DNA of 63,244 bases, filler included, from Sluysia triapertura (lineage: Eukaryota), in assembly GCA_046118255.1 (NCBI GenBank). It is 5 parts of 5 records of this genome, joined end to end, with 100 filler letters (N's around TTAATTAATTAA, not from the genome) between each part and the next. Parts side by side here need not be neighbours in the genome. Positions count along the whole stretch, not along the records: positions 1 to 13,231 come from JBJNIA010051228.1; 4 more parts are not named here. One strand, written 5' to 3'. Both the position numbers and the translations under genes were made by a program. This document shows, piece by piece, positions 1 to 13,231 of the stretch. Every line of letters begins with the position of its first letter. Position 1 is the stretch's first letter. The notes beneath the pieces are model-generated. The model was not told where the DNA came from. It did not search any database and saw only the letters and a list, made by a program, of their open reading frames with translations.

Positions 1-593
1 TTTAGTTCTTTTAATTGACATACATGTATAATTAACAAACATCATTAATCTGATATCCATACTTAAATTTATAGGTTATAAAACCATCAGAACGATAACA
101 TCTATTTTTATAACTCTGTTTTAAAATAAATGTGACAATATAGCAAGCTACTTATATTGCCTATTTTAGCGAAGCAACTGAATCTCTTGAAGTAATATAA
201 ACTTATTTTTGATGATGGGAAAAATATAAACAAAGGACGATAACAATCATAAGACAAGAACAATAATGCGATAATAATAATATAGTAATAATGACACGAC
301 AATAGCAGTTTTAGTAATATTAATAATAAATTTTAGTTTGTATCTGTATATAATTGTTGAAATATTACTGTTACTGTGAAGATGTGCTGAATTTGCATTG
401 TTTTGTCGTGTAAAAATTGTTTCTCTTTTATGTATTGTGTCTGTTGATTTGATGTTTTGTGTTGGATTGAAATGAACTTTGTTTAATTTGTTTTTGTTTA
501 TGAGAAATGTGTTCATGTTTGTCTATGATTGTGTTTAAGTTGTGTTTTAAATTTTAGCGCACCAATTATGATATTTAATATATTTGTTTTCAG

Positions 594-602
594 ACAATAT
601 CG
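594..602 (+). CDS. 9-nt micro-exon ACA ATA TCG (TIS)
   Basis: tttcag|ACAATATCG|gttaat; paralog at 4176-4184. Confidence 0.7.
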
Positions 603-3600
603 GTTAATTATTATTTAATTCAAATTTTTGTTCTTATACAAATAATAAATAGTCATAGTAAAAGTAATTGTACAATTTTAATTTTAGACACAACCACCTA
701 AGGTAAATTTATTTTATTAAAATACAACTTATAATGATGAAATAATTAACAATACTATTTTACTTTCCAAATGTTTACTAAATTTTGATTTTAAAGTTTT
801 GTATTGTTCGTCTTCTTTTGTTAAATGAAACAGAATCTGCATGAGTTTTCATAAGGGTGCATTAATTTCTTGGTATTTCTTAACTCCACGAATCGTGTTT
901 TACATAGTTTCCAATATACAAATGGAATAATAATTTTTTGTTAACAGAATTGTATTTTGTATGTGATTTACGTATTAAAATTCTTAATTATCCAACGTTG
1001 AATTACATTTGAAGCAACTGTTATTGCGGATAAATTATTTTTGCTTTCAAAATATTAAATATACAGTTAAGAGTGTGTTGGAAATATATTTAACTAGTTC
1101 TATACTTTGCTGTTTTTACAAAATTTATTTATCTGTTATTCCGTTGTGTTGAGAAATTATAATTGTATAAAAAAATGTATAGTTTTTAAATATTATTCAT
1201 CTGAAACAATTAATGCAAATGTAATGCTTTATGTGGAACTTATCCCTTTAGGAAATAATACAAATTTGATAAAAAAATTCATTCAATTCATTGCTTTATA
1301 AGTGATATTATGTATAAAATTAAATAAATATATAAATTCAGGCAGCACCGGTTAGTATGTAGTGAATATTTTTTACCATTTATTCATTTACTACCTTTTT
1401 TGTAATTCTACCAAAATATTTTTACGATGATTTTCATTTAAATCTAGGCTGTAGGTGCAAGTCAAGGTTATGGGGTAAGCATTAAAAGTTTTATTGAAAT
1501 TTCATTCATTTAATTTAAACTAGATTTTCATAAATATTATAAATATGGTATTTATATGTTAATTTGTATTGGTTTATATAAGGAATCGATTTATTGGACA
1601 ATCTTATAAAAAATAATTGTATCGATTAAATAAAATTTTTTGGATAAGTTTTAAGTATTTTATAAATATTTTCTTAATATTGTGACAATTGGTATACTAT
1701 TTGGAACTTATCGCTTTTGAATTCTTAAAATTTAGTAATATATTTCACCGAATTAATTGCTTTATTATTGATATTGAATGTAGTATTTATTAAATATATA
1801 AATTTCCGGCAACAGTGCTTGGTATTAATTGAATTCCTATTTTTCTAATTCAATCAATATATATTCGCACTTAGACTGTAGGTATAAGTCAAGGTTTTGG
1901 GATTAGCTTTAAAATTTTTATTGTATTTTGATAGATTCCTCAAACACTATTGAAATATCATAACAGGTCAAAATGCAATGTTTAGAATATATTAGATATA
2001 GACATCCATAAATTTCTATTTGTAAAGATATTTAATATAGTTCATTGGCCAGTGTGAAATAATTTTACTGCGAAATGAAGTTTATATTTCAAGTTTTGAA
2101 TATTACAATAATTAGAATTAAATGTCTGAAAATAATTAAATTTTTAATTTATCACTAAATATATGTTCTTTTAATAACAAAGATTTGTTATCAATTCTTG
2201 TTACTTTATAGAATTTTTATGTTTACGTAGATATATTGTGAAAAAGGTAAAGTAATAGAATAAAAATAAAAACTTAAAGTGAGTTCACCAACGTACTGGG
2301 CTTACCAGCTAGGCTCAGCCGTTGGATTTTCTTGATAAGTTAATAGTAAGTAAGTCTCAAAGAATATAATATATGCTAAATGACTCTAAAAATGCTTGAT
2401 CTTCTGGAGGCAATTAAATTTCAAAATACTTTAATAATACTTAAATTTATAAATAGATTTTACGTTGATTCCTTTATACGGAATCTTTGAAAATGATTTT
2501 TCGTAGCTAGTAATAAATACTAGCGGTTGAAAGCATGAAACAGAACGAAAGATTTTATAATTAAAACTATGTAATTTATAATAACAAAAGTCAAAAGGTT
2601 TTTGTAATTTATTCTTAAGAGAAAAACGTTAATAAGGTACAATGATACATATAATTTACACAAATTAACTAATTCAGTTAATTTTCTTACTAAGAGATTT
2701 TAATGATAATGATTTTGCGTATATATCTGTGAAAAGATCCAATAATTCTGTACAGAAATTTACGTGTATTTTACTTATGATACTTCACAGTATCTTCCTT
2801 AACAGTAATTAACTAACGTGATCAAAATTTTTAAAATGCGTCTTCAATGAAATCGTTGCAACTGTTAGAAATTGTTGGAATAAAACTAATAACTGGAACT
2901 GTGTACTAAAATTGTTGAAAAGAATTTGTCGAAATTAAATTGAACTGTAAAATAGAATTGTGAATTGTCTTAAAATTTATTGCTTTATAAAGTGTCAATT
3001 CGGCCCTGACTGAATTGAAACAAAGTTAATAATTAAAACAAAATCTAAAATAATTTTAAAGATTTTTTTCGCTCACATTAATTTAAGAACTTCAATTAAT
3101 ATTTTAATATTTTAGTAAATTATAAAATCAAATAAAAATTGCATATTTAAAAGAAAAATCAAAAATTACTTTTATAAAATTTGAAATATCCAAATTCAAA
3201 AATTAAATTCCAAATGAATGTCTACAGCTGTTTAAAAATCAATAAAAATATATAATTGTTTACTTATAGTTACAAATATAGTGCATTGACGTCAATAAGC
3301 ATTGTGTATATTAAAGATATTTTAAGCCTATGTAAATATCAATGTAACTTATTTTCTCAATTTTAAATTAATGTTAAATTGTAATAAATTTTTATCGCTA
3401 ATTAAGGAAATAAAAAATCAATATTAATTCAAAATCATATTTATTACTTTAATATTTTACTGATATAGTTAGAATTTCAATTTACTATGATACTTCCTTG
3501 CTACTAAGCATTCTTTTCTTAATTTTATATTACGATTTAAATGAGAAATGTCACACATTATTGTCATGTATAACTGCATGTGAAAATAGTTTTAAATAAA

Positions 3601-6600
3601 ATTTCATAAAAATTTAAATGCTGTAATATTAATTCACTTAATATTAAGTATATTAAAAGATACATAATATAATCACTTACATTAATTGGCCCAAAAATAT
3701 TAATTTCTTATAGTTTTGTTATAATGAAAATATAATTAGTATTTCAATATTTTTTCGGGTAAAATCGATTAAGGTTATTTTAATTTTTTTATAATAATTG
3801 TAGAATAAAGTAAATAACTTTGCTTTCATCTGGCATCCTCTATGATTGATTTGTTTCATCAAATTTCATGAGGAATTCAATTTTAATAATAATCATTTCG
3901 CATTTTAAAACAAATATTTAAATGAATTCTCTTTTATTATAAGTATATAATATTTTTTCAGATGCCTTCAGCTAAGGTATTTAATACTATTTGAATTATT
4001 TTAATTTCATTTTCTACATGTAGTTTTTATTTTGAGCAGAAAAATATTTAAAATTTATTTATCGAAATTATTAAATTATCATTAACAATAATATAAATAA
4101 GGAAATAATTTAATTATTAATAATTTTCAGTTTTTTATTGTCGTTCAATAAAATTCTTATAATATTTATTATCAGACGATATCGGTTAATTAATATTTAA
4201 TAATATTTTGTTCTTATTCAAATAATAAATAGTCGTGGTGAAATTAATTGTATAATTGTAATTGTAGATGCAACCATCTAAGGTAAATTCATATTATTAA
4301 AATATGATTTATAATGATGGAATAATTAACTAAGAAAATTACTTTCGAAATTTGTACTAAGATTTGATTCTTTTCTTGTGTTAAGGGAAATAGGATGTGA
4401 ATGAGTTTTCATAAGGGTACATTAATTTCTTGGCATTTCTTAACTCATCATGGTTATCAGGAAATAATTATTAATTAGGTAATCTACATTGATTGACTGA
4501 AATTCAGGTGTCCTTGATTGACTTAATGAATTATTAATGACATTCATTTTGTGAAATTGTGTTTCTAATGCTAGGTGTTTTCTTAATCTAAAACTTAACT
4601 TGCAGCAAAATAAATTATTATTCTGAGTCCGTTTACAGTATTCGACTTACTAATGGCGTACCTGTAAAATTGCGTGAAAACTATTATCAAGATTAATTGT
4701 ACAAAATACTCTTTGCTTTACCTTAATCAATAATGGGCAAAATCTTCGTTTATGTCAACTAATACTAAATAGCTTATAAACTAATCAAGACCAACGCTGA
4801 CCTATGGAATATCAGAATTAATATAAAAATCAAGTGAATAATATTTGTATATAAATTTGTCGTTTCTTATATCTTCAAATCTTAATGACCGTTAGAACTT
4901 TGTAGTTTTTTATTAAAATTTAATGAAACAATATTGGAATCAATGTATTTTCGATAAAAAGTATATTTCAGTATAAATTGATCGTAGTGTACGGTAATGT
5001 TAGGATAATTATAATAAAAACAAGATTTGAAAATTTTTTAATACTTTTATTACACAAAATTAAGATTAAAAATGAAATTTATTATAAATTTATAAAATTC
5101 AATAAAAGCGACAGTCAACAACACAAAAATTTTATAAATGATAAATTTATAATAACAATAATAATTAAACTATAATAAGGGTTTAGCCGAGAGACTCTAC
5201 CCTATAATAAAGATTTTATAATTGACCTTTAGGACCAACTAAAGATTGGAGAATATATATATTAGATTGATTTTATGATTGGCTTTAATGATCACCCGTG
5301 CAAAACAGTAATTTAAGTTTATATTGTAGCTCAATGAGAGTTTGCACACTATGTAAATCAAACTTACGGATCACTTAGTAATATAGACAATCTATCTCCA
5401 GCAATATCGTTTGAATTTGAATTTATCTGTTGAGCCTCTTATCGAATACGCGGGAATCGCACAATAACTGAAATGATGGATGTGAAACCTTTGTACACAA
5501 ATAGTTTAATAATAAATTTGATGATGACAAGCCGAATGATGTCGAGAATAATTTTTTCTAGCAACTTTATTTTCCGAAATCACGAATTTCAAAATGGCGT
5601 AAAACAATTCTCTTTGTTCATATTTAATGGCGTTTTTGCTTTATGTATGTACAAAGACATCTTTTAACATTTGATTTACATAAACAAATTTATTTCTATA
5701 AGTTTCTTTTGAGTTATTTTTTGATTTATAATAATCATAATTTTAATTTTATTATAATTAAAATAATAATTTTTTAAATAATACAATTTTAATAATTTTT
5801 TTATAATTTTATTTTTACAAAAAACCATAAAAAATATAAAAATAAGATTTTTTACACCTTTACACTAACAATGGTTTGTGTCATTCTTTTCCTTTGCACA
5901 TTTACTGTTAGAAAGCAATCAAAACCATTAGATAATTAGCTGTTTCCAATATACATATAGGATAATAATTTTTTGTTGAAAAGTTGTATTTATATCTGAT
6001 TTATCTATTAGAATTCTAAATTTTTCAACGTTGAATTACATTTAAAGCAACTATTATTTGACGATAAATTATTTTTTAAATATACAGGTAATAGTGTAAG
6101 TTGATCAGAGGTCCCGCTTTTTCACAATTTGTCCCGCTATTAAATAGTATCTCTGAAATATATTTAACTTTGCCCTTTTATAAAATTTATCGATCAGTTA
6201 TTCCGTTGCACAATTATTGAACAATTGTGTTATTTTATAAATTATATTCATCTGAAACAATTCATGAAAATGTAATGCCTTATGTGGAACTTATCCTTTT
6301 AGGAAATAGTTAAAATTAATAAGAATTACATCCTATTAAATGCTTTATAAGTGATATTGAATATAATACTTAATGATTATATAAACTTTAGGCAGCATCA
6401 GTTAGTATTTAGTAATTATTATTTACCATTTACTCATTTTCGTACTCATTTACTTCCATTTTTGTAATTCTACCAATATACTTTTTACGATATCCTTTTC
6501 ATTTAATCTAGGCTGCAAGTGCAAGTCAAGCTTATGGGGTAAGTGTTTAAAGTTTATTCAAAATTCATTTATTTAATTTAAACTTGTCTTTTATAAATAT

Positions 6601-9600
6601 AATAAATATAGTATTTTATATGTTAATTCGCATTGGCAAGTATAATGAATTTATATGTAAGTTCAATCTTTGGAAAAGAATTGTGTCGATGAAATGAAAT
6701 TCTTTTTGCAATTTTTGTAAACTATCTGAAAATATTAGTGACAATATTATGTTATTTGGAACATGTTATTTTAGGAAATAATTAAAATTTAATAATAGAA
6801 TTACATCAAATTTATTGCTTTATCAATCATATTCAATATATATTCAGGCAGCATCGGTTAGTATTTACTGAATATTCTTTACCATTCCTTTTTGTAATTC
6901 TATCAAAATAATTTAATTATCTATTATATTGTCTTTTAGACTGCAGGTGTGAGTCAAGAATATCGAGTTAGCTATTTTTTTCTTTTTAATTTTCAATATA
7001 TAATCATCTTAAATAAAACAGTTGTATTATTTATTTTAAGTAACATTTCAAATAAAGAAATAAGAGTTATGATGTTGATGGTGATGCTCATGATAACTAT
7101 TATCAAGCTTATGCTTATAATAAATTGATCTAATCATTATTTATTTGATTTAATCCTCAATATTTCTGTGCTATATTTCTCTAATATCATCATCAATTCC
7201 ACCTACATACGGTTCCACGGTTTTAACATTCTCTGGACATTATCACAAACTTTCAACTTCAATTGATTTTTAAAATATAAGATTCCGTAAAAAATTGTAT
7301 TTATTTTATATATAATATTCATAGGAAAAATTTATTGAAAATGTAATTTCGAATTTTTCGTTTTATGAAATAATTAAAATTTAGTAAAAGAAAGACGTCA
7401 AAATCATAATTTTATAAATGATATTGAATATAATATTTAATAATTATATAAACTTTAGGCAGCATCGGTTAGTATTTAGTGATTATTATTTACCATTTAC
7501 TCATTTTCGTACCCATTTACTTCCATTTTTGTAATTCTACCAATATACTTTTTACGATATCCTTTTCATTTAATCTAGGCTGCAGGTGCAAGTCAAGGTT
7601 ATGGGGTAAGCGTTAAAAGTTTTATATAAATGTCATACATTTATTTTAAATTTTATTTATTTATTTTGCATTGGTAAATATAATGAATTGATACAATATG
7701 AATAAATCTATTTTGATTATTATCATTATAATTTAAAATTGACTTTGTTTATAAAGTAAATTCGAATAATTGTCTTTATTTTGATAAGATAAATTATTGC
7801 ATTGAATTTTATTCTGTACTTCAATCTTAGTTTTATGAATAGCATAATAAAATAACTGAATAATAATTTATAAAAATATACCTAATTAGTTTTAAATTTT
7901 ACTCTTGTCTTTGATTAAGTTTTAGAAACATTTTTTAACCAAGTGCTAAGTTGTTTATAAATAAATATTAAACATTGTGTTTGGAACTCAAAGCTTAATA
8001 AAAAATTTATGAGACATACGTATAATTTGCATGAAAGTAATAATAATGATATTATTGAACATGATATCTGAAAATAATTTTCTACACTTCAGCCGTCAGA
8101 GGTTAGGTTTACATTTGTAAACGTCATTAGTTACGTTTTTAGAAATATTATTTTAATTTTTTTATGCGTATTCTATATATTAGGGTACAATATATAAAGT
8201 TATAGGTGCTAATATACCTGAAAGTTTTGCACAGTAAATGATGTTATTTAATTTTAATTTATAAAATAAATTAATTTATATATGTTCTAATATATCCAAA
8301 CGTGCATTTATTTGATATAATTGTAAAAGCTTTTAGGTCTAATTCATTAAGATATTTTCATTAACCATAAATCAAATTTTTGTTAAATCATATCCATCTG
8401 TGTAATTTTATTGAACTGCAAACACTTATTGAAAATGCAATGTATAGAATATATTAGATAGAGACCTCGATAAATTTGTATTTATAAAGATATTTAATAT
8501 AGTTTATTCGCCAGTGTGAATTAATTTTACTACTAAATGAAGTTTATATTTCAATTTTTGAATATTACAACAATTAGAATTAAATGTCTGAAAATAATTA
8601 AATTTTTAATTTATAACTAAATATATGTTCTTTTGATAAAATTGATTGAGATTAGTCAAAGATTTGTTATCAATTCTTGTTACTTTATACTACTTTTACG
8701 TTTAGTAGATATTCACATTATAACCCTATGTAAATTTCAATGTAACTGATTTTCTCAATTTCAAGGTAATGCGACATTGTAATAAATTTCTATCGCTAAT
8801 TAAGGAAATAAAAATTAATGATAATTCAAGATTTAATATTTTACTGTTATAGCTAGAATTTCAATTTACTCTGATATATTCTAGCTTATAAGCATTCCTT
8901 TCATATTACAGTAATGTCAGAAAATATTTTTAAATAAAATTTCTTAAACAATTTAAATGCTATTACGTTAATTTTATATTAATTACATTAAGTTTATGAC
9001 AAGATTAATATTATCCTCACTCATATTTGTTGATCCAAAAATATTAATTTTTTTTCATTTTTTTATAACCACATTATTTATAACCATAATATATTTAATA
9101 ATTCAATGTATTTTCAGGTACAATCAATTAAGGTTTTTTTTTAATTTTTATAATAAATGTAGAATTAATTAAATAACTTTGTTTTCACATGACATAAGCT
9201 AGGATTAATGTGTTTCCTTCACTTTCGTGAATATTCCTTTTTTTCTGGATTGAGTTTTAATATTTTTATTCAAATTTTATACAATCTCGTTGAATCTTTT
9301 TTGTATTTTTAGTTTTTTTCACTTGATTTTCATAAATATTATTTAAGTGTATTTTATCTTTTGATTAGTATTGGTAACTATATGTAATTGATACCACATA
9401 AACATTCGAATGTGATTATTATAATTATAATAAAAATATTTATAAATTAATTTCGATCTAACATTTATTACTTTCATACGATAAATTATTCACTCGAATT
9501 TTTTTCGGTACACTTATTTTGACTTTAAAATAACAACAAAATAAATGAACCTTTGACTACATTTTACTCTTTAAATATCTTATCGGTATTGTTAATATGC

Positions 9601-11370
9601 AGCACTATCTTTCTCTAAGAATTGTGTCGATATGTTATAACTCATTAACCTAATTTTAATATTACTTAAAATGCAATGCTTTATTGGAGCTTATCGTATT
9701 TAGGAAATAATAAAAATTTGATAAAATTATATCTATAATTCATTGCTTTCTAACTGCTATTGAATGTATTATTCAACAATTATATAAACTTTAGGCAGCA
9801 TCGGTTAGCATTAATGAATATTATTTACCATTTACTCATTAACTTTCGTTTTTTGTAATTCAATGAAACTCTCTTTTAGACTGAAGGTCTAAGTCAAGAT
9901 TATCGGTTTAGTTGTTATAACGCACAATATTTTTTTTAAATTTCAGTATAATAATCCTTATTATACTATTCTTTAATTGATTAAATTTATTTATTGAAAA
10001 TTCATTTCCAGTTTGATGTTTAGTTTCATATCAGACATTGCTGCATCAAACTTTGTGTGACTCATAATATTATCAACAACATTCCTAGTTTAAATCGTAC
10101 ATTCCTTAAAAATTTCATAGGTTTTCTTATAAATTCATCCTACAAATCATCCACATACTCAAATAAATAACATGAATACAAACACGGCTTGTGGTATCGA
10201 CTTCATGGCAACAGGTAAAAGAAGAAAATTCTCACAAATTGCAGTCCATTTAACAAACCCATCCTACAGATCGTCTAAAACTCAAATAAATTATGCTTTT
10301 AAAATATTAAAAAGATTACATTTTGGAAGTATTACAGGTTAGACATAGAGTATACTTAAATTCCCAATGAAATACATAATGATTAAAACAACTATTAAAA
10401 CAAGTAAATTCATCAGAATACTAATTGATGCTACCTATAAACAAATTTTATATATTTTATAAAAATATTCGTATGAAATATTAGGGAAATTTAATCCTTT
10501 ATTGAGAACTTATTCTTTTAGGAAATAATACGAATTGATAAAAAAATTACGTAAAATTTTAACTGATATTGAATATAATATCTAATTATATAAACTGCAG
10601 GCAGCATCGTTTAGTATTATTGAATATTATTTATCGTTTACTCATTAACTTCCTTTTTTGAAATTCAATGAACATAATTTTTCGATATTTTTTTAATATA
10701 TAGGCTGCAGGTGCAAGTCAACGTCATGGCGTTAGCTTTAAAATGTTTATTCAAATTTCGTACAATCTGCTTTAATCACTTTTTCAATATTCATTTATTT
10801 TAAACTTGATTTTCATAAATATTATAAACATTATTTTTATATTAATTAGTATTGGTAATACAAGGAATTTATAACCACATAAATAATTCGAATGTGATTA
10901 TTATCACTATAATTTAAAAGTGACTTTGTTTATAAAGTAAAGTCTAACCAACATTTGTTACGATATGTTTTTGAATTGAATTTTATTTTAAGAATAAAAT
11001 AATAGCATAATAAAGCAACTAAGTAGAAAAATTTATTTAATTAGTTTTAGATTTCCTATTATTTCCAATATTATTGCTCCTGTTGTTACGTACCTCTACT
11101 TAAAAATAATTTTAACGAAGTTTTAAGTTGCTTATAAATATTGAGTAATATGTGTTGTGTAATTTTATGCATTGTACTCAGATCCTAAAGTTTAGTCAAA
11201 AATTTAAATGAAACATACGTAATAATTTGTACGAAATTAGTAATTATAATATTATTGAATATTATCTGAAACAATTTTACATACTTCAGCCATCAGAGGT
11301 TAGCGTTACGTTTTTAGAAATAGTTTTACTATTTTAAGCGTATTCTAAATATTAGAATATAATATATAAA
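594..11370 (+). CDS. Putative micro-exon gene (partial; start and stop exons not identified) encoding a low-complexity Ala/Ser/Gly/Gln/Tyr/Lys repeat protein
   Basis: 18 exons of 9, 15 or 27 nt, each between (c/t)ag and gt, totalling 276 nt = 92 codons. Only phase 0 is stop-free. Differences between paralogous short exons fall mainly at synonymous third positions. Confidence 0.75.
688..702 (+). CDS. 15-nt micro-exon (TQPPK)
   Basis: ttttag|ACACAACCACCTAAG|gtaaat; paralog at 4268-4282. Confidence 0.75.
1342..1350 (+). CDS. 9-nt micro-exon (AAP)
   Basis: ttcag|GCAGCACCG|gttagt. Confidence 0.75.
1448..1474 (+). CDS. 27-nt micro-exon (AVGASQGYG)
   Basis: tctag|GCTGTAGGTGCAAGTCAAGGTTATGGG|gtaagc. 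Confidence 0.8.
1809..1901 (+). pseudogene. Dead micro-exon dyad: 9-nt copy 1809-1817 and 27-nt copy 1875-1901 (TVGISQGFG)
   Basis: 9-nt copy flanked by cg and ct instead of ag and gt; 27-nt copy keeps tag but its donor reads attagc. Confidence 0.6.
2288..2325 (+). other. GC-rich hairpin, copy 1
   Basis: ccaacg-ta-ctgggctta-(ccagc)-taggctcag-c-cgttgg. Confidence 0.55.
3759..3773 (+). pseudogene. Dead 15-nt micro-exon (VKSIK)
   Basis: ttttcgg|GTAAAATCGATTAAG|gttatt; acceptor cag mutated to cgg relative to paralog 9118-9132. Confidence 0.55.
3962..3976 (+). CDS. 15-nt micro-exon (MPSAK)
   Basis: ttttttcag|ATGCCTTCAGCTAAG|gtattt. Confidence 0.7.
4176..4184 (+). CDS. 9-nt micro-exon (TIS)
   Basis: atcag|ACGATATCG|gttaat; synonymous ACA/ACG difference from 594-602. 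Confidence 0.7.
4268..4282 (+). CDS. 15-nt micro-exon (MQPSK)
   Basis: ttgtag|ATGCAACCATCTAAG|gtaaat. Confidence 0.75.
6392..6400 (+). CDS. 9-nt micro-exon (AAS)
   Basis: ctttag|GCAGCATCA|gttagt. Confidence 0.75.
6512..6538 (+). CDS. 27-nt micro-exon (AASASQAYG)
   Basis: tctag|GCTGCAAGTGCAAGTCAAGCTTATGGG|gtaagt. Confidence 0.8.
6848..6856 (+). CDS. 9-nt micro-exon (AAS)
   Basis: ttcag|GCAGCATCG|gttagt. Confidence 0.75.
6940..6966 (+). CDS. 27-nt micro-exon (TAGVSQEYR)
   Basis: cttttag|ACTGCAGGTGTGAGTCAAGAATATCGA|gttagc. Confidence 0.7.
7459..7467 (+). CDS. 9-nt micro-exon (AAS)
   Basis: ctttag|GCAGCATCG|gttagt. Confidence 0.75.
7579..7605 (+). CDS. 27-nt micro-exon (AAGASQGYG)
   Basis: tctag|GCTGCAGGTGCAAGTCAAGGTTATGGG|gtaagc. 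Confidence 0.8.
8093..8101 (+). CDS. 9-nt micro-exon (PSE)
   Basis: cttcag|CCGTCAGAG|gttagg; paralog 11290-11298 differs only by synonymous CCG/CCA. Confidence 0.7.
8184..8198 (+). CDS. Possible 15-nt micro-exon (GTIYK)
   Basis: attag|GGTACAATATATAAA|gttata; lies 82 nt after the PSE exon like the other dyads; weak donor. Confidence 0.4.
9118..9132 (+). CDS. 15-nt micro-exon (VQSIK)
   Basis: ttttcag|GTACAATCAATTAAG|gttttt. Confidence 0.65.
9795..9803 (+). CDS. 9-nt micro-exon (AAS)
   Basis: ctttag|GCAGCATCG|gttagc. Confidence 0.75.
9880..9906 (+). pseudogene. 27-nt micro-exon with lost in-frame donor (TEGLSQDYR)
   Basis: cttttag|ACTGAAGGTCTAAGTCAAGATTATCGG|tttagt. Confidence 0.55.
10601..10609 (+). 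pseudogene. 9-nt micro-exon with lost in-frame donor (AAS)
   Basis: ctgcag|GCAGCATCG|tttagt. Confidence 0.55.
10704..10730 (+). CDS. 27-nt micro-exon (AAGASQRHG)
   Basis: tatag|GCTGCAGGTGCAAGTCAACGTCATGGC|gttagc. Confidence 0.7.
11290..11298 (+). CDS. 9-nt micro-exon (PSE)
   Basis: cttcag|CCATCAGAG|gttagc. Confidence 0.7.
11356..11370 (+). CDS. Possible 15-nt micro-exon (NIIYK)
   Basis: attag|AATATAATATATAAA|gttata; paralog of 8184-8198. Confidence 0.35.
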
Positions 11371-11947
11371 GTTATAGATGTTAATGTACCTGAACATTTC
11401 TAAATTAAAATTAAAGGCCATCATTAATTAATGATGTTATTTAATTTTAATTTATATATGTTCTAATTTATCCAAACATGCATTTATTTGATATCAATAT
11501 ATAAGTACTTTTAGGTTTAATTCATTAAGATGATTTCATTAATTATAAATTATATTTTGGTACATCATAACCCTACGTTTAATTTATTGAACCTCAAACA
11601 CTTATTGAAATAAAAGACAAATGAAAATGCAATGAATAGAATATATTAGATATAGACCTCGATAAATATATTTAATGCGATTTATTGGCCAGTGTGAACT
11701 AATTTTACTACGACATGAAATTTATATTTCAAATTTCGAATATTACAATAATTAGAATTAAACATCTGAAAATAGTTTAATTTTTTATACATTAGTATAA
11801 ATATGTTCTTTTAAAAAAATTATTAATATTAGTCAAAGATTTGTTATCAATTCTTTTTTACTTTATAGTATTTTTACGCAGATATTCTTATTTGTGAGAC
11901 AAAAGTTAATTTATTTGCTCGAGAATAAAGATGTGAATGTGAGTTCA

Positions 11948-11986
11948 CCAACGTATCTAGTCTTACTGGTTAGGGTTAGCCGTTGG
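11948..11986 (+). other. GC-rich hairpin, copy 2
   Basis: ccaacg-tat-ctagtctta-(ctggt)-tagggttag-c-cgttgg. Confidence 0.55.
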
Positions 11987-12730
11987 ATTTTTTAGAAGAA
12001 AATAACTGTCAATTAACAATATCAGTAATGCTTATTTGATTTATTAAGTGTATTTGTCTTTAAATTGCTTTCTTATAAATATTTTATCAGTTAAGCTTAC
12101 GAAAATCCTACTTTAAATAGGATATTTATAATAATTCACTATTTTTCGCTACCGATAAAAATTCGGATTAATAATTGATTTAAGGAATTTAATGATTTTG
12201 TGACTGTAACAATTTACAACGTTATTACTTTCAATTTTCTAATTTCTTTATGAATTTACGAATGATCCTTTAAACAGGATTGAAAACGTTTTAGATAATT
12301 TATGTGTATCGATGTTAAAGATCGGCTTTTATGAAAACTGATTTAATAAGTTTAGTGAATTATGTATATATTAACGGTTACAGTAAAAGAAAAAACAAAA
12401 GATTCTTACAATAATAATTATCAAAATTAAGTTTACTTGAATTAACTATAATAAAGTAATTTTAATTAAGATTTTACGAAGAATCTTTAAACGGTTCTAA
12501 AATACATTATATAATAATTTAAGTATATTTTACAAACGTACTAAAATGTACAGCAACTTAAGAATAATGAACTAACAAAATAGTCCAGAAATTTGGACCT
12601 TCGATGTTTAAATTTTTTAAACCAACTGTTGATAATAATTTTTAAAAACAAATGTTATGAGTTTTAGTTTTTAAAATGTTATGTATATATACTAATTTAC
12701 CTAACACTGAAACAATTAAAACAATTGATT

Positions 12731-12840
12731 TTAACCCTTTCAATGCTGCGGGGATTTACATGTCTCAGAGACTGATTATTTACTACTGGGATATATTTAT
12801 CTCATAATTAAACTACTTCAGGGACATATGTGTCCCAAGG
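12731..12840 (+). mobile_element. piggyBac-like terminus (TTAA + CCCTTT...) with three subterminal repeats
   Basis: ttaa|ccctttcaatgctgcg followed by gggatttacatgtctca, gggatatatttatctca, gggacatatgtgtccca; partner end not seen. Confidence 0.45.
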
Positions 12841-13231
12841 AATTTTATCAAAAACCATATTTTCTAAAAATCTGAAATTATGTAAACATGTCCCTTTACT
12901 TATTTACATCACATTTAGTTCAATTGTACGGAAATATCTTCACTGGCAAAAATTAATATTGAAATTCATATTTAAAGTTAAAGATTTTAAAATAATTTTA
13001 ATACATAAATTTAAAAATAATTACTTACATTATATAACCGACTAGAACGTTCAAGATCGTAAATATTTTCAAAATTAAAATTTTATAAATAAAAATAGAT
13101 TGAGACGCAGAGCTGAAGTGCACGGACGACATTTGGGGCATTTATGAGTGTAATATAACATGTGCATTTAACAATTTTTGTAAAAGTTATTCTCTGTAAA
13201 AATAAATAGCTATTTGCTAGCGTTCTCCATA

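What the first reader, a model, noticed from the sequence alone, without database searches (positions are those of the whole stretch)
594..11298. Signature of coding selection fixes the micro-exon reading frame at phase 0
Seen: paralogous exons differ at synonymous third positions (ACA/ACG Thr at 594 vs 4176; CCG/CCA Pro at 8093 vs 11290; TCA/TCG Ser at 6392 vs 6848, 7459 and 9795) while the flanking introns carry many substitutions and indels. Phase 1 gives TAA in the 15-nt xxxxK exons, and phase 2 gives TAG in 1448-1474 and TGA in 6940-6966. No intact copy has an internal indel. Inference: the exons were translated while the duplicates diverged.
Basis: partly seen in the sequence, partly recalled or inferred. 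Interest (0 to 1): 0.75.

Follow-up and report, generated by a model that had tools for sequence, protein, structure and literature searches.

The report
Tandem micro-exon gene in a flatworm
This AT-rich flatworm contig carries a repeated array of 9-, 15- and 27-base exons that most likely code in phase 0 for a low-complexity protein.

Summary
The window is a whole 13.2-kb contig (GC 22%) from an AT-rich genome. Its matching mitochondrion uses the flatworm genetic code, and vertebrate (fish-like) DNA is co-assembled with it.

The contig holds 17 intact and 4 decayed AG..GT-bounded blocks of 9, 15 or 27 nt. They fall into six types, all on the + strand. Another 38 intact copies lie on 10 other contigs.

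No intact copy has an indel.

**What fails.**
- Third positions are the least variable, not the most (events per site 1.58 / 2.50 / 1.33).
- Raw exon identity is about the same as intron identity (0.75-0.94 against 0.77-0.87).
- Many differences between paralogous exons are non-synonymous.
- Omega is about 0.65 and is not significant (p=0.17).

**Why phase 0 still holds.**
- G/C sites decay half as fast in exons as in introns (p=5e-6).
- Indels avoid the exons (P about 0.001).
- None of the 55 intact exons has a frame-0 stop.
- Internal third positions are 91% A/T.
- The genome's own codon usage favours frame 0 by +38 bits, against -13 and -26 for the other frames.

**Best reading.** This is a tandemly amplified micro-exon gene of the schistosome MEG/SmPoMuc kind, encoding an Ala-Gly-Ser-Gln-Tyr-rich protein. 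There is no RNA evidence, and the gene ends were not found.

The parts
594..602 (+). 9-nt micro-exon type A (TIS), AG/GT intact
688..702 (+). 15-nt micro-exon type B (TQPPK), intact
1342..1350 (+). 9-nt micro-exon type C (AAP), intact
1448..1474 (+). 27-nt micro-exon type D, intact; 97-nt intron after the C exon
1809..1820 (+). relic of a type C exon: no AG or GT, length changed
   Evidence: read directly, by comparison with the alignment
1875..1901 (+). relic of a type D exon: donor is AT, 5 changes from consensus
3962..3976 (+). 15-nt micro-exon type B2 (MPSAK), intact
4176..4184 (+). 9-nt micro-exon type A (TIS), intact
4268..4282 (+). 15-nt micro-exon type B (MQPSK), intact
6392..6400 (+). 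type C exon (AAS), intact
6512..6538 (+). type D exon, intact
6848..6856 (+). type C exon (AAS), intact
6940..6966 (+). type D exon of the D' subfamily (ends in R, gttag donor), intact
7459..7467 (+). type C exon (AAS), intact
7579..7605 (+). type D exon, identical to the family consensus
8093..8101 (+). 9-nt micro-exon type E (PSE), intact
9795..9803 (+). type C exon (AAS), intact
9880..9906 (+). D' copy whose donor is TT: probable pseudo-exon
10601..10609 (+). type C copy whose donor is TT: probable pseudo-exon
10704..10730 (+). type D exon, intact
11290..11298 (+). type E exon (PSE), intact

Best explanation
The contig is part of a large locus, at least 67 kb spread over 11 contigs. It holds one gene or a few genes built from tandemly duplicated, symmetric phase-0 micro-exons.

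Shown here:
- There are six exon types of 9, 15 or 27 nt.
- Each keeps its AG and GT, its exact length, its G+C and an open frame 0, while the surrounding introns have diverged to 65-86% identity and are full of indels.
- The organisation is nested. A 9-nt C exon and a 27-nt D exon, separated by an intron of about 98 nt, repeat roughly every 430-810 nt. These pairs sit inside super-units of 3-5 kb that also carry the E, B2, A and B exons.

Inferred:
- The units arose by unequal crossing-over.
- Because every exon is a multiple of three, any copy can be lost, skipped or duplicated without breaking the frame. This would explain why decayed copies are tolerated.
- The product would be a repetitive low-complexity protein. 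The tally is Ala 27%, Gly 16%, Ser 16%, Gln 8%, Tyr 6%, Pro 6%, with no Cys, Phe, Trp or Asn.
- Selection acts mainly on exon definition (splice sites, length, exon composition). Amino-acid sequence is only weakly constrained or is diversifying, as reported for schistosome micro-exon genes.
For: Census:
- 55 intact exons, all in one orientation within each contig.
- The paralogous contigs are 65-86% identical, so they are not haplotigs.

Constraint:
- G/C sites: 2.19 events per site in exons against 4.41 in introns (p=4.5e-6).
- A/T sites: 1.27 against 1.87 (p=0.05).
- The same holds for the 15 fully intact units.
- Overall, 65 exon events were observed against 121 expected.
- Splice dinucleotides show 0.62 events per site, and the changes lie in copies that are otherwise decayed.
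- Of 40 gap intervals, only one touches an exon, and that copy has lost its donor.

Frame:
- 0 of 55 intact exons has a frame-0 stop. 6 have an offset-1 stop and 12 have an offset-2 stop.
- The codon-usage log-ratio, using tubulin genes from AT-rich contigs of the same genome, is +38 bits for frame 0, against -13 and -26.
- GC1/2/3 of the exon consensi is 16/28, 20/28 and 8/28. Six of the eight third-position G/C bases are the last base before the donor.

Taxon:
- A 14.9-kb mitochondrial contig of GC 22% reads AAA at six conserved Asn sites and ATA at Ile/Val/Leu sites, which is code 9.
- No arthropod cuticle domain or insect odorant-receptor domain was found.

Precedent:
- Schistosome MEGs have symmetric exons of 6-81 nt, mostly 15 nt, with introns of 0.1-5 kb (PMC10526429).
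- Their mature regions show dN/dS near or above 1 (PMC4350168).
- SmPoMuc carries up to 20 tandem genomic repeats, each with one 27-bp exon (PMC2576457).
Against: - There is no transcript evidence. The only public run holding the sequence is DNA.
- Amino-acid-level purifying selection is not significant (omega about 0.65, p=0.17).
- Synonymous changes are also below the intron-rate expectation (15 against 24.4). Part of the constraint may therefore be on RNA or splicing rather than on protein.
- Four of the 21 copies in the window are broken.
- No first exon, signal peptide or terminal exon was found.
- The six exon consensi give only 28 independent codons for the codon-usage argument.
- The link between this contig and the flatworm mitochondrion rests on shared base composition and on the main genome being AT-rich. 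It does not rest on physical linkage.
Confidence: 0.7

Rival explanations
1. The array was once a coding micro-exon array but is now a decaying pseudogene or a dead part of a gene. On this reading the frame-0 and codon-usage signals are inherited from the ancestral unit rather than maintained.
For: - Four broken copies in the window, and several more elsewhere. One of them has a frame-0 TAG together with a lost donor.
- Omega is not significantly below 1.
- There is no RNA evidence.
Against: - G/C sites decay at half the intron rate across units whose introns are only 65-86% identical.
- No stop and no indel occurs in any of the 55 copies that keep both splice sites.
Confidence: 0.12
2. The blocks are real exons of a spliced but non-coding RNA, or the constraint on them is purely at the level of splicing signals. 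On this reading no protein frame is under selection.
For: - Synonymous sites are as constrained as non-synonymous ones (observed/expected 0.61 and 0.40).
- Third positions are the least variable.
- In a 9-nt exon most bases lie within the extended splice-site motifs.
Against: - The three-base periodicity of G+C and the match to the genome's preferred codons exist in one frame only.
- All lengths are multiples of three, and frame 0 is never closed.
Confidence: 0.1
3. The sequence is a non-genic dispersed or satellite repeat whose conserved cores happen to be flanked by AG and GT.
For: - The whole unit is repeated, introns included.
- Raw substitution identity of the cores is not higher than that of the flanks.
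- The contig also carries true high-copy repeats.
Against: - Six unrelated core types all have AG/GT, a pyrimidine-rich upstream flank and a length that is a multiple of three.
- The cores are about 50% G+C in a 22% background and resist decay.
- Genome-wide there are only about 27 copies of the 27-nt core, all in this family of contigs.
Confidence: 0.06

Closest known systems
Schistosoma micro-exon genes (MEGs)
   Same: - A flatworm gene with a coding region made of very small symmetric exons (multiples of three, 15 nt common), separated by introns of 0.1-5 kb.
- Weak or positive selection on the mature peptide (PMC10526429, PMC4350168).
   Different: - MEGs have 10-20 mostly unique exons and encode small secreted proteins with a signal peptide.
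- Here at least 55 exons of six types are tandemly amplified.
- No signal-peptide exon was found.
- Sequence kinship could not be tested.
SmPoMuc polymorphic mucins of Schistosoma mansoni
   Same: Tandem genomic repeats, each carrying one 27-bp exon that encodes a 9-residue repeat, with up to 20 per gene. The repeats prevent assembly of the locus (PMC2576457).
   Different: - SmPoMuc repeat units are about 1 kb and more than 94% identical, and are separated by GA microsatellites. Here the units are roughly 430-810 nt, 65-86% identical, and nested in larger units with five further exon types.
- The peptide here is Ala/Gly/Ser/Gln/Tyr-rich, with little Thr or Pro, so it is not obviously mucin-like.
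SmVAL-6 composite gene
   Same: A larger gene that contains a MEG-like stretch of very small symmetric exons (PMC4350168). This shows that such arrays can be internal modules.
   Different: No VAL (CAP) domain or any other domain exon was found on the contigs examined.
Vertebrate elastin and titin PEVK exon arrays (from my own knowledge, not tested)
   Same: Repetitive structural proteins encoded by many short exons of one phase, which allows cassette-like skipping.
   Different: Those exons are 27-186 nt, not 9-27 nt. They come from an unrelated taxon and have a different sequence composition.

Membership tests
Micro-exon gene (MEG) architecture | Most of the coding region lies in exons of about 6-81 nt | tested here: met
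   All 55 candidate exons are 9, 15 or 27 nt. The definition is from PMC10526429.
Micro-exon gene (MEG) architecture | Symmetric exons: lengths are multiples of three and all share one phase | tested here: met
   All lengths are divisible by three. Frame 0 is open in 55/55 and is favoured by codon usage.
Micro-exon gene (MEG) architecture | N-terminal signal peptide on a longer first exon; secreted product | tested here: inconclusive
   No ATG-started phase-0 exon was found upstream of the first array unit on C124523. The gene start may lie on another contig.
Micro-exon gene (MEG) architecture | Transcribed, with alternative skipping of micro-exons | not testable with these tools
   No RNA run is available for this organism. 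Read laying returned DNA contigs only.
Micro-exon gene (MEG) architecture | Occurs in platyhelminths | tested here: met
   The mitochondrial contig of matching GC uses AAA=Asn and ATA=Ile. The AT-rich contigs are the main genome. The link to this contig is by composition only.
Micro-exon gene (MEG) architecture | Sequence similarity to a named MEG family | not tested
The exons are 3-9 residues, too short to search singly.
SmPoMuc-type tandem-exon gene | Tandem genomic repeats, each with one 27-bp exon | tested here: met
   There are 23 intact 27-nt exons. Spacings between successive C-D pairs range from about 430 to 810 nt.
SmPoMuc-type tandem-exon gene | Intronic part of the repeats nearly identical (>94%) | tested here: not met
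   Units are 65-86% identical.
SmPoMuc-type tandem-exon gene | Ser/Thr/Pro-rich mucin repeat followed by a constant 3' region of 13 exons | tested here: not met
   The tally is Ala 27%, Gly 16%, Ser 16%, Thr 3.5%, Pro 6%. No constant region was found.

The most novel reading that the evidence does not exclude
A single giant modular gene of at least 55 symmetric 9/15/27-nt exons over at least 67 kb, in a fish-parasitic flatworm outside the schistosomes. It would encode a silk- or elastomer-like Ala-Gly-Ser-Gln-Tyr protein whose length and repeat content are tuned by exon skipping and unequal crossing-over. Candidate roles are attachment adhesive, eggshell or a surface coat. This would extend micro-exon architecture from small secreted peptides to a structural repeat protein.
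Probability: 0.25. Interest if true: 0.6.

Novelty: new member of a known kind. Interest (0 to 1): 0.4.

Why it matters
Arrays of 9-nt exons are at the limit of what a spliceosome can define, and gene predictors miss them. This locus would therefore be unannotated in any automatic annotation.

If it is transcribed, it would show that the micro-exon and tandem-exon strategy known from schistosomes exists in another AT-rich parasitic flatworm. It would also show that the strategy can build a long repetitive protein.

There is a methodological lesson too. In very AT-rich genomes, third positions already sit at mutational equilibrium. A third-position excess is then the wrong test for coding. G/C retention, indel exclusion and codon usage are the informative signals.

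Tried and rejected
- **Arthropod structural protein** (resilin or cuticle AAPA/V motif, troponin or PEVK micro-exons). Rejected: the own genome has no Chitin_bind_4 and no insect odorant-receptor hit, and the mitochondrion uses code 9.
Rejected: CpG observed/expected is 1.08. G to A is simply the commonest change.
- **Haplotigs.** Rejected: paralogous contigs are at most 86% identical.
- **Rfam scan of the window.** No match, including no hammerhead ribozyme.
- **tRNA scan.** None found.
- **27-nt exon pattern in public metagenome contigs.** No match.
- **Protein Atlas on a COX1 piece, to name the taxon.** Uninformative.
- **PWM scan for further exons.** Only the known ones came back, and the scan is circular because it was trained on those same exons.
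- **Search for a first exon upstream of the array on C124523.** None found.
- **Pfam on open stretches of the neighbouring contigs.** Only a weak Sel1 hit and a weak methyltransferase-N hit.
- **Joined (spliced) protein model.** Not sent to any search tool. Exon columns were concatenated only inside my own counting scripts.

Full report
**What the window is.**
Places 1-13231 are the whole of contig C51228, from an assembly of 619 Mb in 263,945 contigs. GC is 20-27% throughout. There is no long ORF, no tRNA and no Rfam match.

The assembly is a mixture.
- Several COX1 contigs of GC 46% are vertebrate. One piece matches 57 of 59 residues of mammalian COX1. The full sequence looks teleost to me, but that is my own recognition and was not tested.
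- Some pieces are bacterial.
- One 14.9-kb mitochondrial contig has GC 22%. Its divergent COX1 uses AAA at six conserved Asn sites and at no Lys site. It uses ATA at Ile/Val/Leu sites and TGA at Trp. That is mitochondrial code 9, used by flatworms and echinoderms. The degree of divergence fits a flatworm.

The best tubulin genes of the assembly all sit on AT-rich contigs (flank GC 0.21-0.27), so the AT-rich organism is the main genome. No arthropod cuticle domain or insect odorant receptor was found. I therefore read the window as nuclear DNA of a flatworm, probably a parasite of fish. The link is by base composition, not by physical linkage.

**The objects.**
On the + strand there are 21 short G+C-rich blocks of six types. 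The types are A (9 nt), B and B2 (15 nt, both ending in Lys), C (9 nt), D (27 nt) and E (9 nt). Seventeen blocks have AG before and GT after them. Four are decayed: 1809-1820, 1875-1901, 9880-9906 and 10601-10609.

A C exon is followed by a D exon after an intron that is 97-99 nt long in most copies. These pairs repeat roughly every 430-810 nt. They are nested in super-units of 3-5 kb that also hold E, B2, A and B.

The same units occur on 10 further contigs. Genome-wide there are 55 intact exons (D 23, C 18, B 4, B2 3, A 3, E 4), and only about 27 copies of the 27-nt core in all. These contigs are 65-86% identical to the window and to each other, so they are paralogues rather than haplotigs. 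Logan contigs of the one public DNA run reproduce the sequence.

**Checking the observation.**
- In the window's own paralogous pairs, exon identity is 0.75-0.94 and aligned intron identity is 0.77-0.87.
- The 23 intact D exons encode 19 different peptides.
- I built a tree from the intron columns of 20 C-D units and mapped the exon changes on it. Changes fall 1.58, 2.50 and 1.33 per site on codon positions 1, 2 and 3.
- Counted as codons, there are 15 synonymous, 38 non-synonymous and no stop changes. Applying intron substitution rates to the ancestral exon predicts 24.4, 94.7 and 4.8. That gives omega of about 0.65 with p=0.17. It is 0.67 for the 15 fully intact units.
- Adding my hand tally of the four small families gives 19:43, p=0.06.
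- The other two frames give 0.8-0.9, so the difference between frames is slight.

**What does show constraint.**
- Introns here are about 85% A/T. A/T columns hardly change, while intron G/C columns decay fast. Stratified by base, G/C sites change 2.19 times per site in exons against 4.41 in introns (p=4.5e-6). A/T sites change 1.27 against 1.87 (p=0.05). Overall there are 65 exon events against 121 expected. The test is conservative, because the tree was fitted to the introns and only well-aligned intron columns were used.
- Of 40 distinct gap intervals in the unit alignment, only one touches an exon. That copy has also lost its donor (P about 0.001).
- The splice dinucleotides change 0.62 times per site, and they change in the decayed copies.

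**What fixes the frame.**
- None of the 55 intact exons has a frame-0 stop. Offset 2 is closed in all seven 15-nt exons and in five D exons. Offset 1 is closed in only six D exons. Stops alone are therefore weak evidence against offset 1.
- Composition decides. In the six consensus exons, G+C is 16/28, 20/28 and 8/28 at positions 1, 2 and 3. Six of the eight third-position G/C bases are the exon's last base, next to the donor. Internal third positions are 2/22 G+C against 36/56 at positions 1 and 2 (Fisher p=9e-6).
- Bona fide genes of the same genome have GC1/2/3 of 0.46/0.38/0.19. Their codon usage scores the exons +38 bits in frame 0, against -13 and -26 in the other frames.
- Third positions are thus already at the genome's mutational equilibrium. 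This explains why they vary least, and why a third-position excess is the wrong test in this genome.

**Explanation.**
The best reading is a tandemly amplified gene of symmetric phase-0 micro-exons.
- Shown: the exon blocks are under constraint on length, borders and composition, and frame 0 is the only frame compatible with all copies and with the genome's codon usage.
- Inferred: the units spread by unequal crossing-over. Because all exons are symmetric, any copy can be lost or skipped harmlessly. The protein sequence is weakly constrained or diversifying.
- The residue tally over single exons is Ala 27%, Gly 16%, Ser 16%, Gln 8%, Tyr 6% and Pro 6%, with no Cys, Phe, Trp or Asn. This is far from what random AT-rich DNA would encode, and it suggests a structural or surface low-complexity protein.
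- A review notes that monogenean attachment adhesive is rich in Gly and Ala but low in Tyr (PMC12472103). That match is only partial, and the function remains speculative.

The array seems to begin near 6904 on C124523, downstream of a minus-strand open stretch with a weak Sel1 match. It seems to end after 6051 on C95001, upstream of minus-strand ORFs. No first or last exon was identified.

**Comparison with what is known.**
- Schistosome MEGs are defined by symmetric exons of 6-81 nt (mostly 15 nt), introns of 0.1-5 kb and a signal peptide. They are reported as restricted to platyhelminths, and their mature regions have dN/dS near or above 1.
- SmPoMuc genes carry up to 20 tandem ~1-kb repeats, each with one 27-bp exon.
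- This locus combines both architectures. It differs in copy number, in the nesting of units, in the much greater divergence between units, and in composition.
- I found no paper in the searched library that describes micro-exon genes in monogeneans. However, the taxon here is not established below flatworm.

**Limits.**
- There is no RNA run for this organism.
- No related genome was within reach.
- The joined protein model was not searched, by rule.

Noticed in passing
window 2268-2345, again near 11930-11995, and inverted at L009 5941-5990: A 76-nt G+C-rich element that folds into a strong hairpin (-24.3 kcal/mol, z=-3.9). It is a high-copy dispersed repeat: more than 2000 first-look candidates, and the 39 other best-scoring copies are 91-97% identical. 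It looks SINE- or MITE-like, with no tRNA or Rfam match.
   Followed up: partly
G000 contigs C219470, C200653, C192378 (L012-L014); C77565, C10703, C159863 (L018-L020): The assembly is mixed. It contains several distinct vertebrate (fish-like) mitochondrial COX1 contigs of GC 46% and bacterial-type oxidase fragments, alongside the AT-rich flatworm-type genome.
   Followed up: partly
L016 (C37458 5823-6779) and L017 (C90747): Further flatworm-type COX1 copies carrying in-frame stops, on AT-rich contigs. They are probably nuclear copies of mitochondrial DNA or a second, damaged mitochondrial haplotype.
   Followed up: no
window 9332-9505 and 10202-10549 (and 7592-7765): Logan word depth rises to 225-1265, against a background that is mostly about 20-150, and many loose ends occur around 10131-10435. 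The 10000-10450 stretch, which is absent from the paralogous units, looks like an inserted high-copy repeat.
   Followed up: no
window 4440-5900: About 1.4 kb with no counterpart in the paralogous A-B to C-D interval. It includes a 23-nt tandem repeat at 5725-5793 and is a likely insertion.
   Followed up: no
G000 contig C6 (L023, L026 and 10643-11023): Three alpha-tubulin-like genes lie within about 12 kb. Their open frames start right after the position of the initiator Met, which suggests an intron directly after the ATG.
   Followed up: no
C-D intron, for example window 7468-7578: The intron length is held at 97-99 nt in most copies. It contains conserved blocks: an extended donor, a TCATTAAC-like motif and a TTTTTAC motif about 28 nt before the acceptor. 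These may be splicing signals needed to define 9-nt exons.
   Followed up: partly
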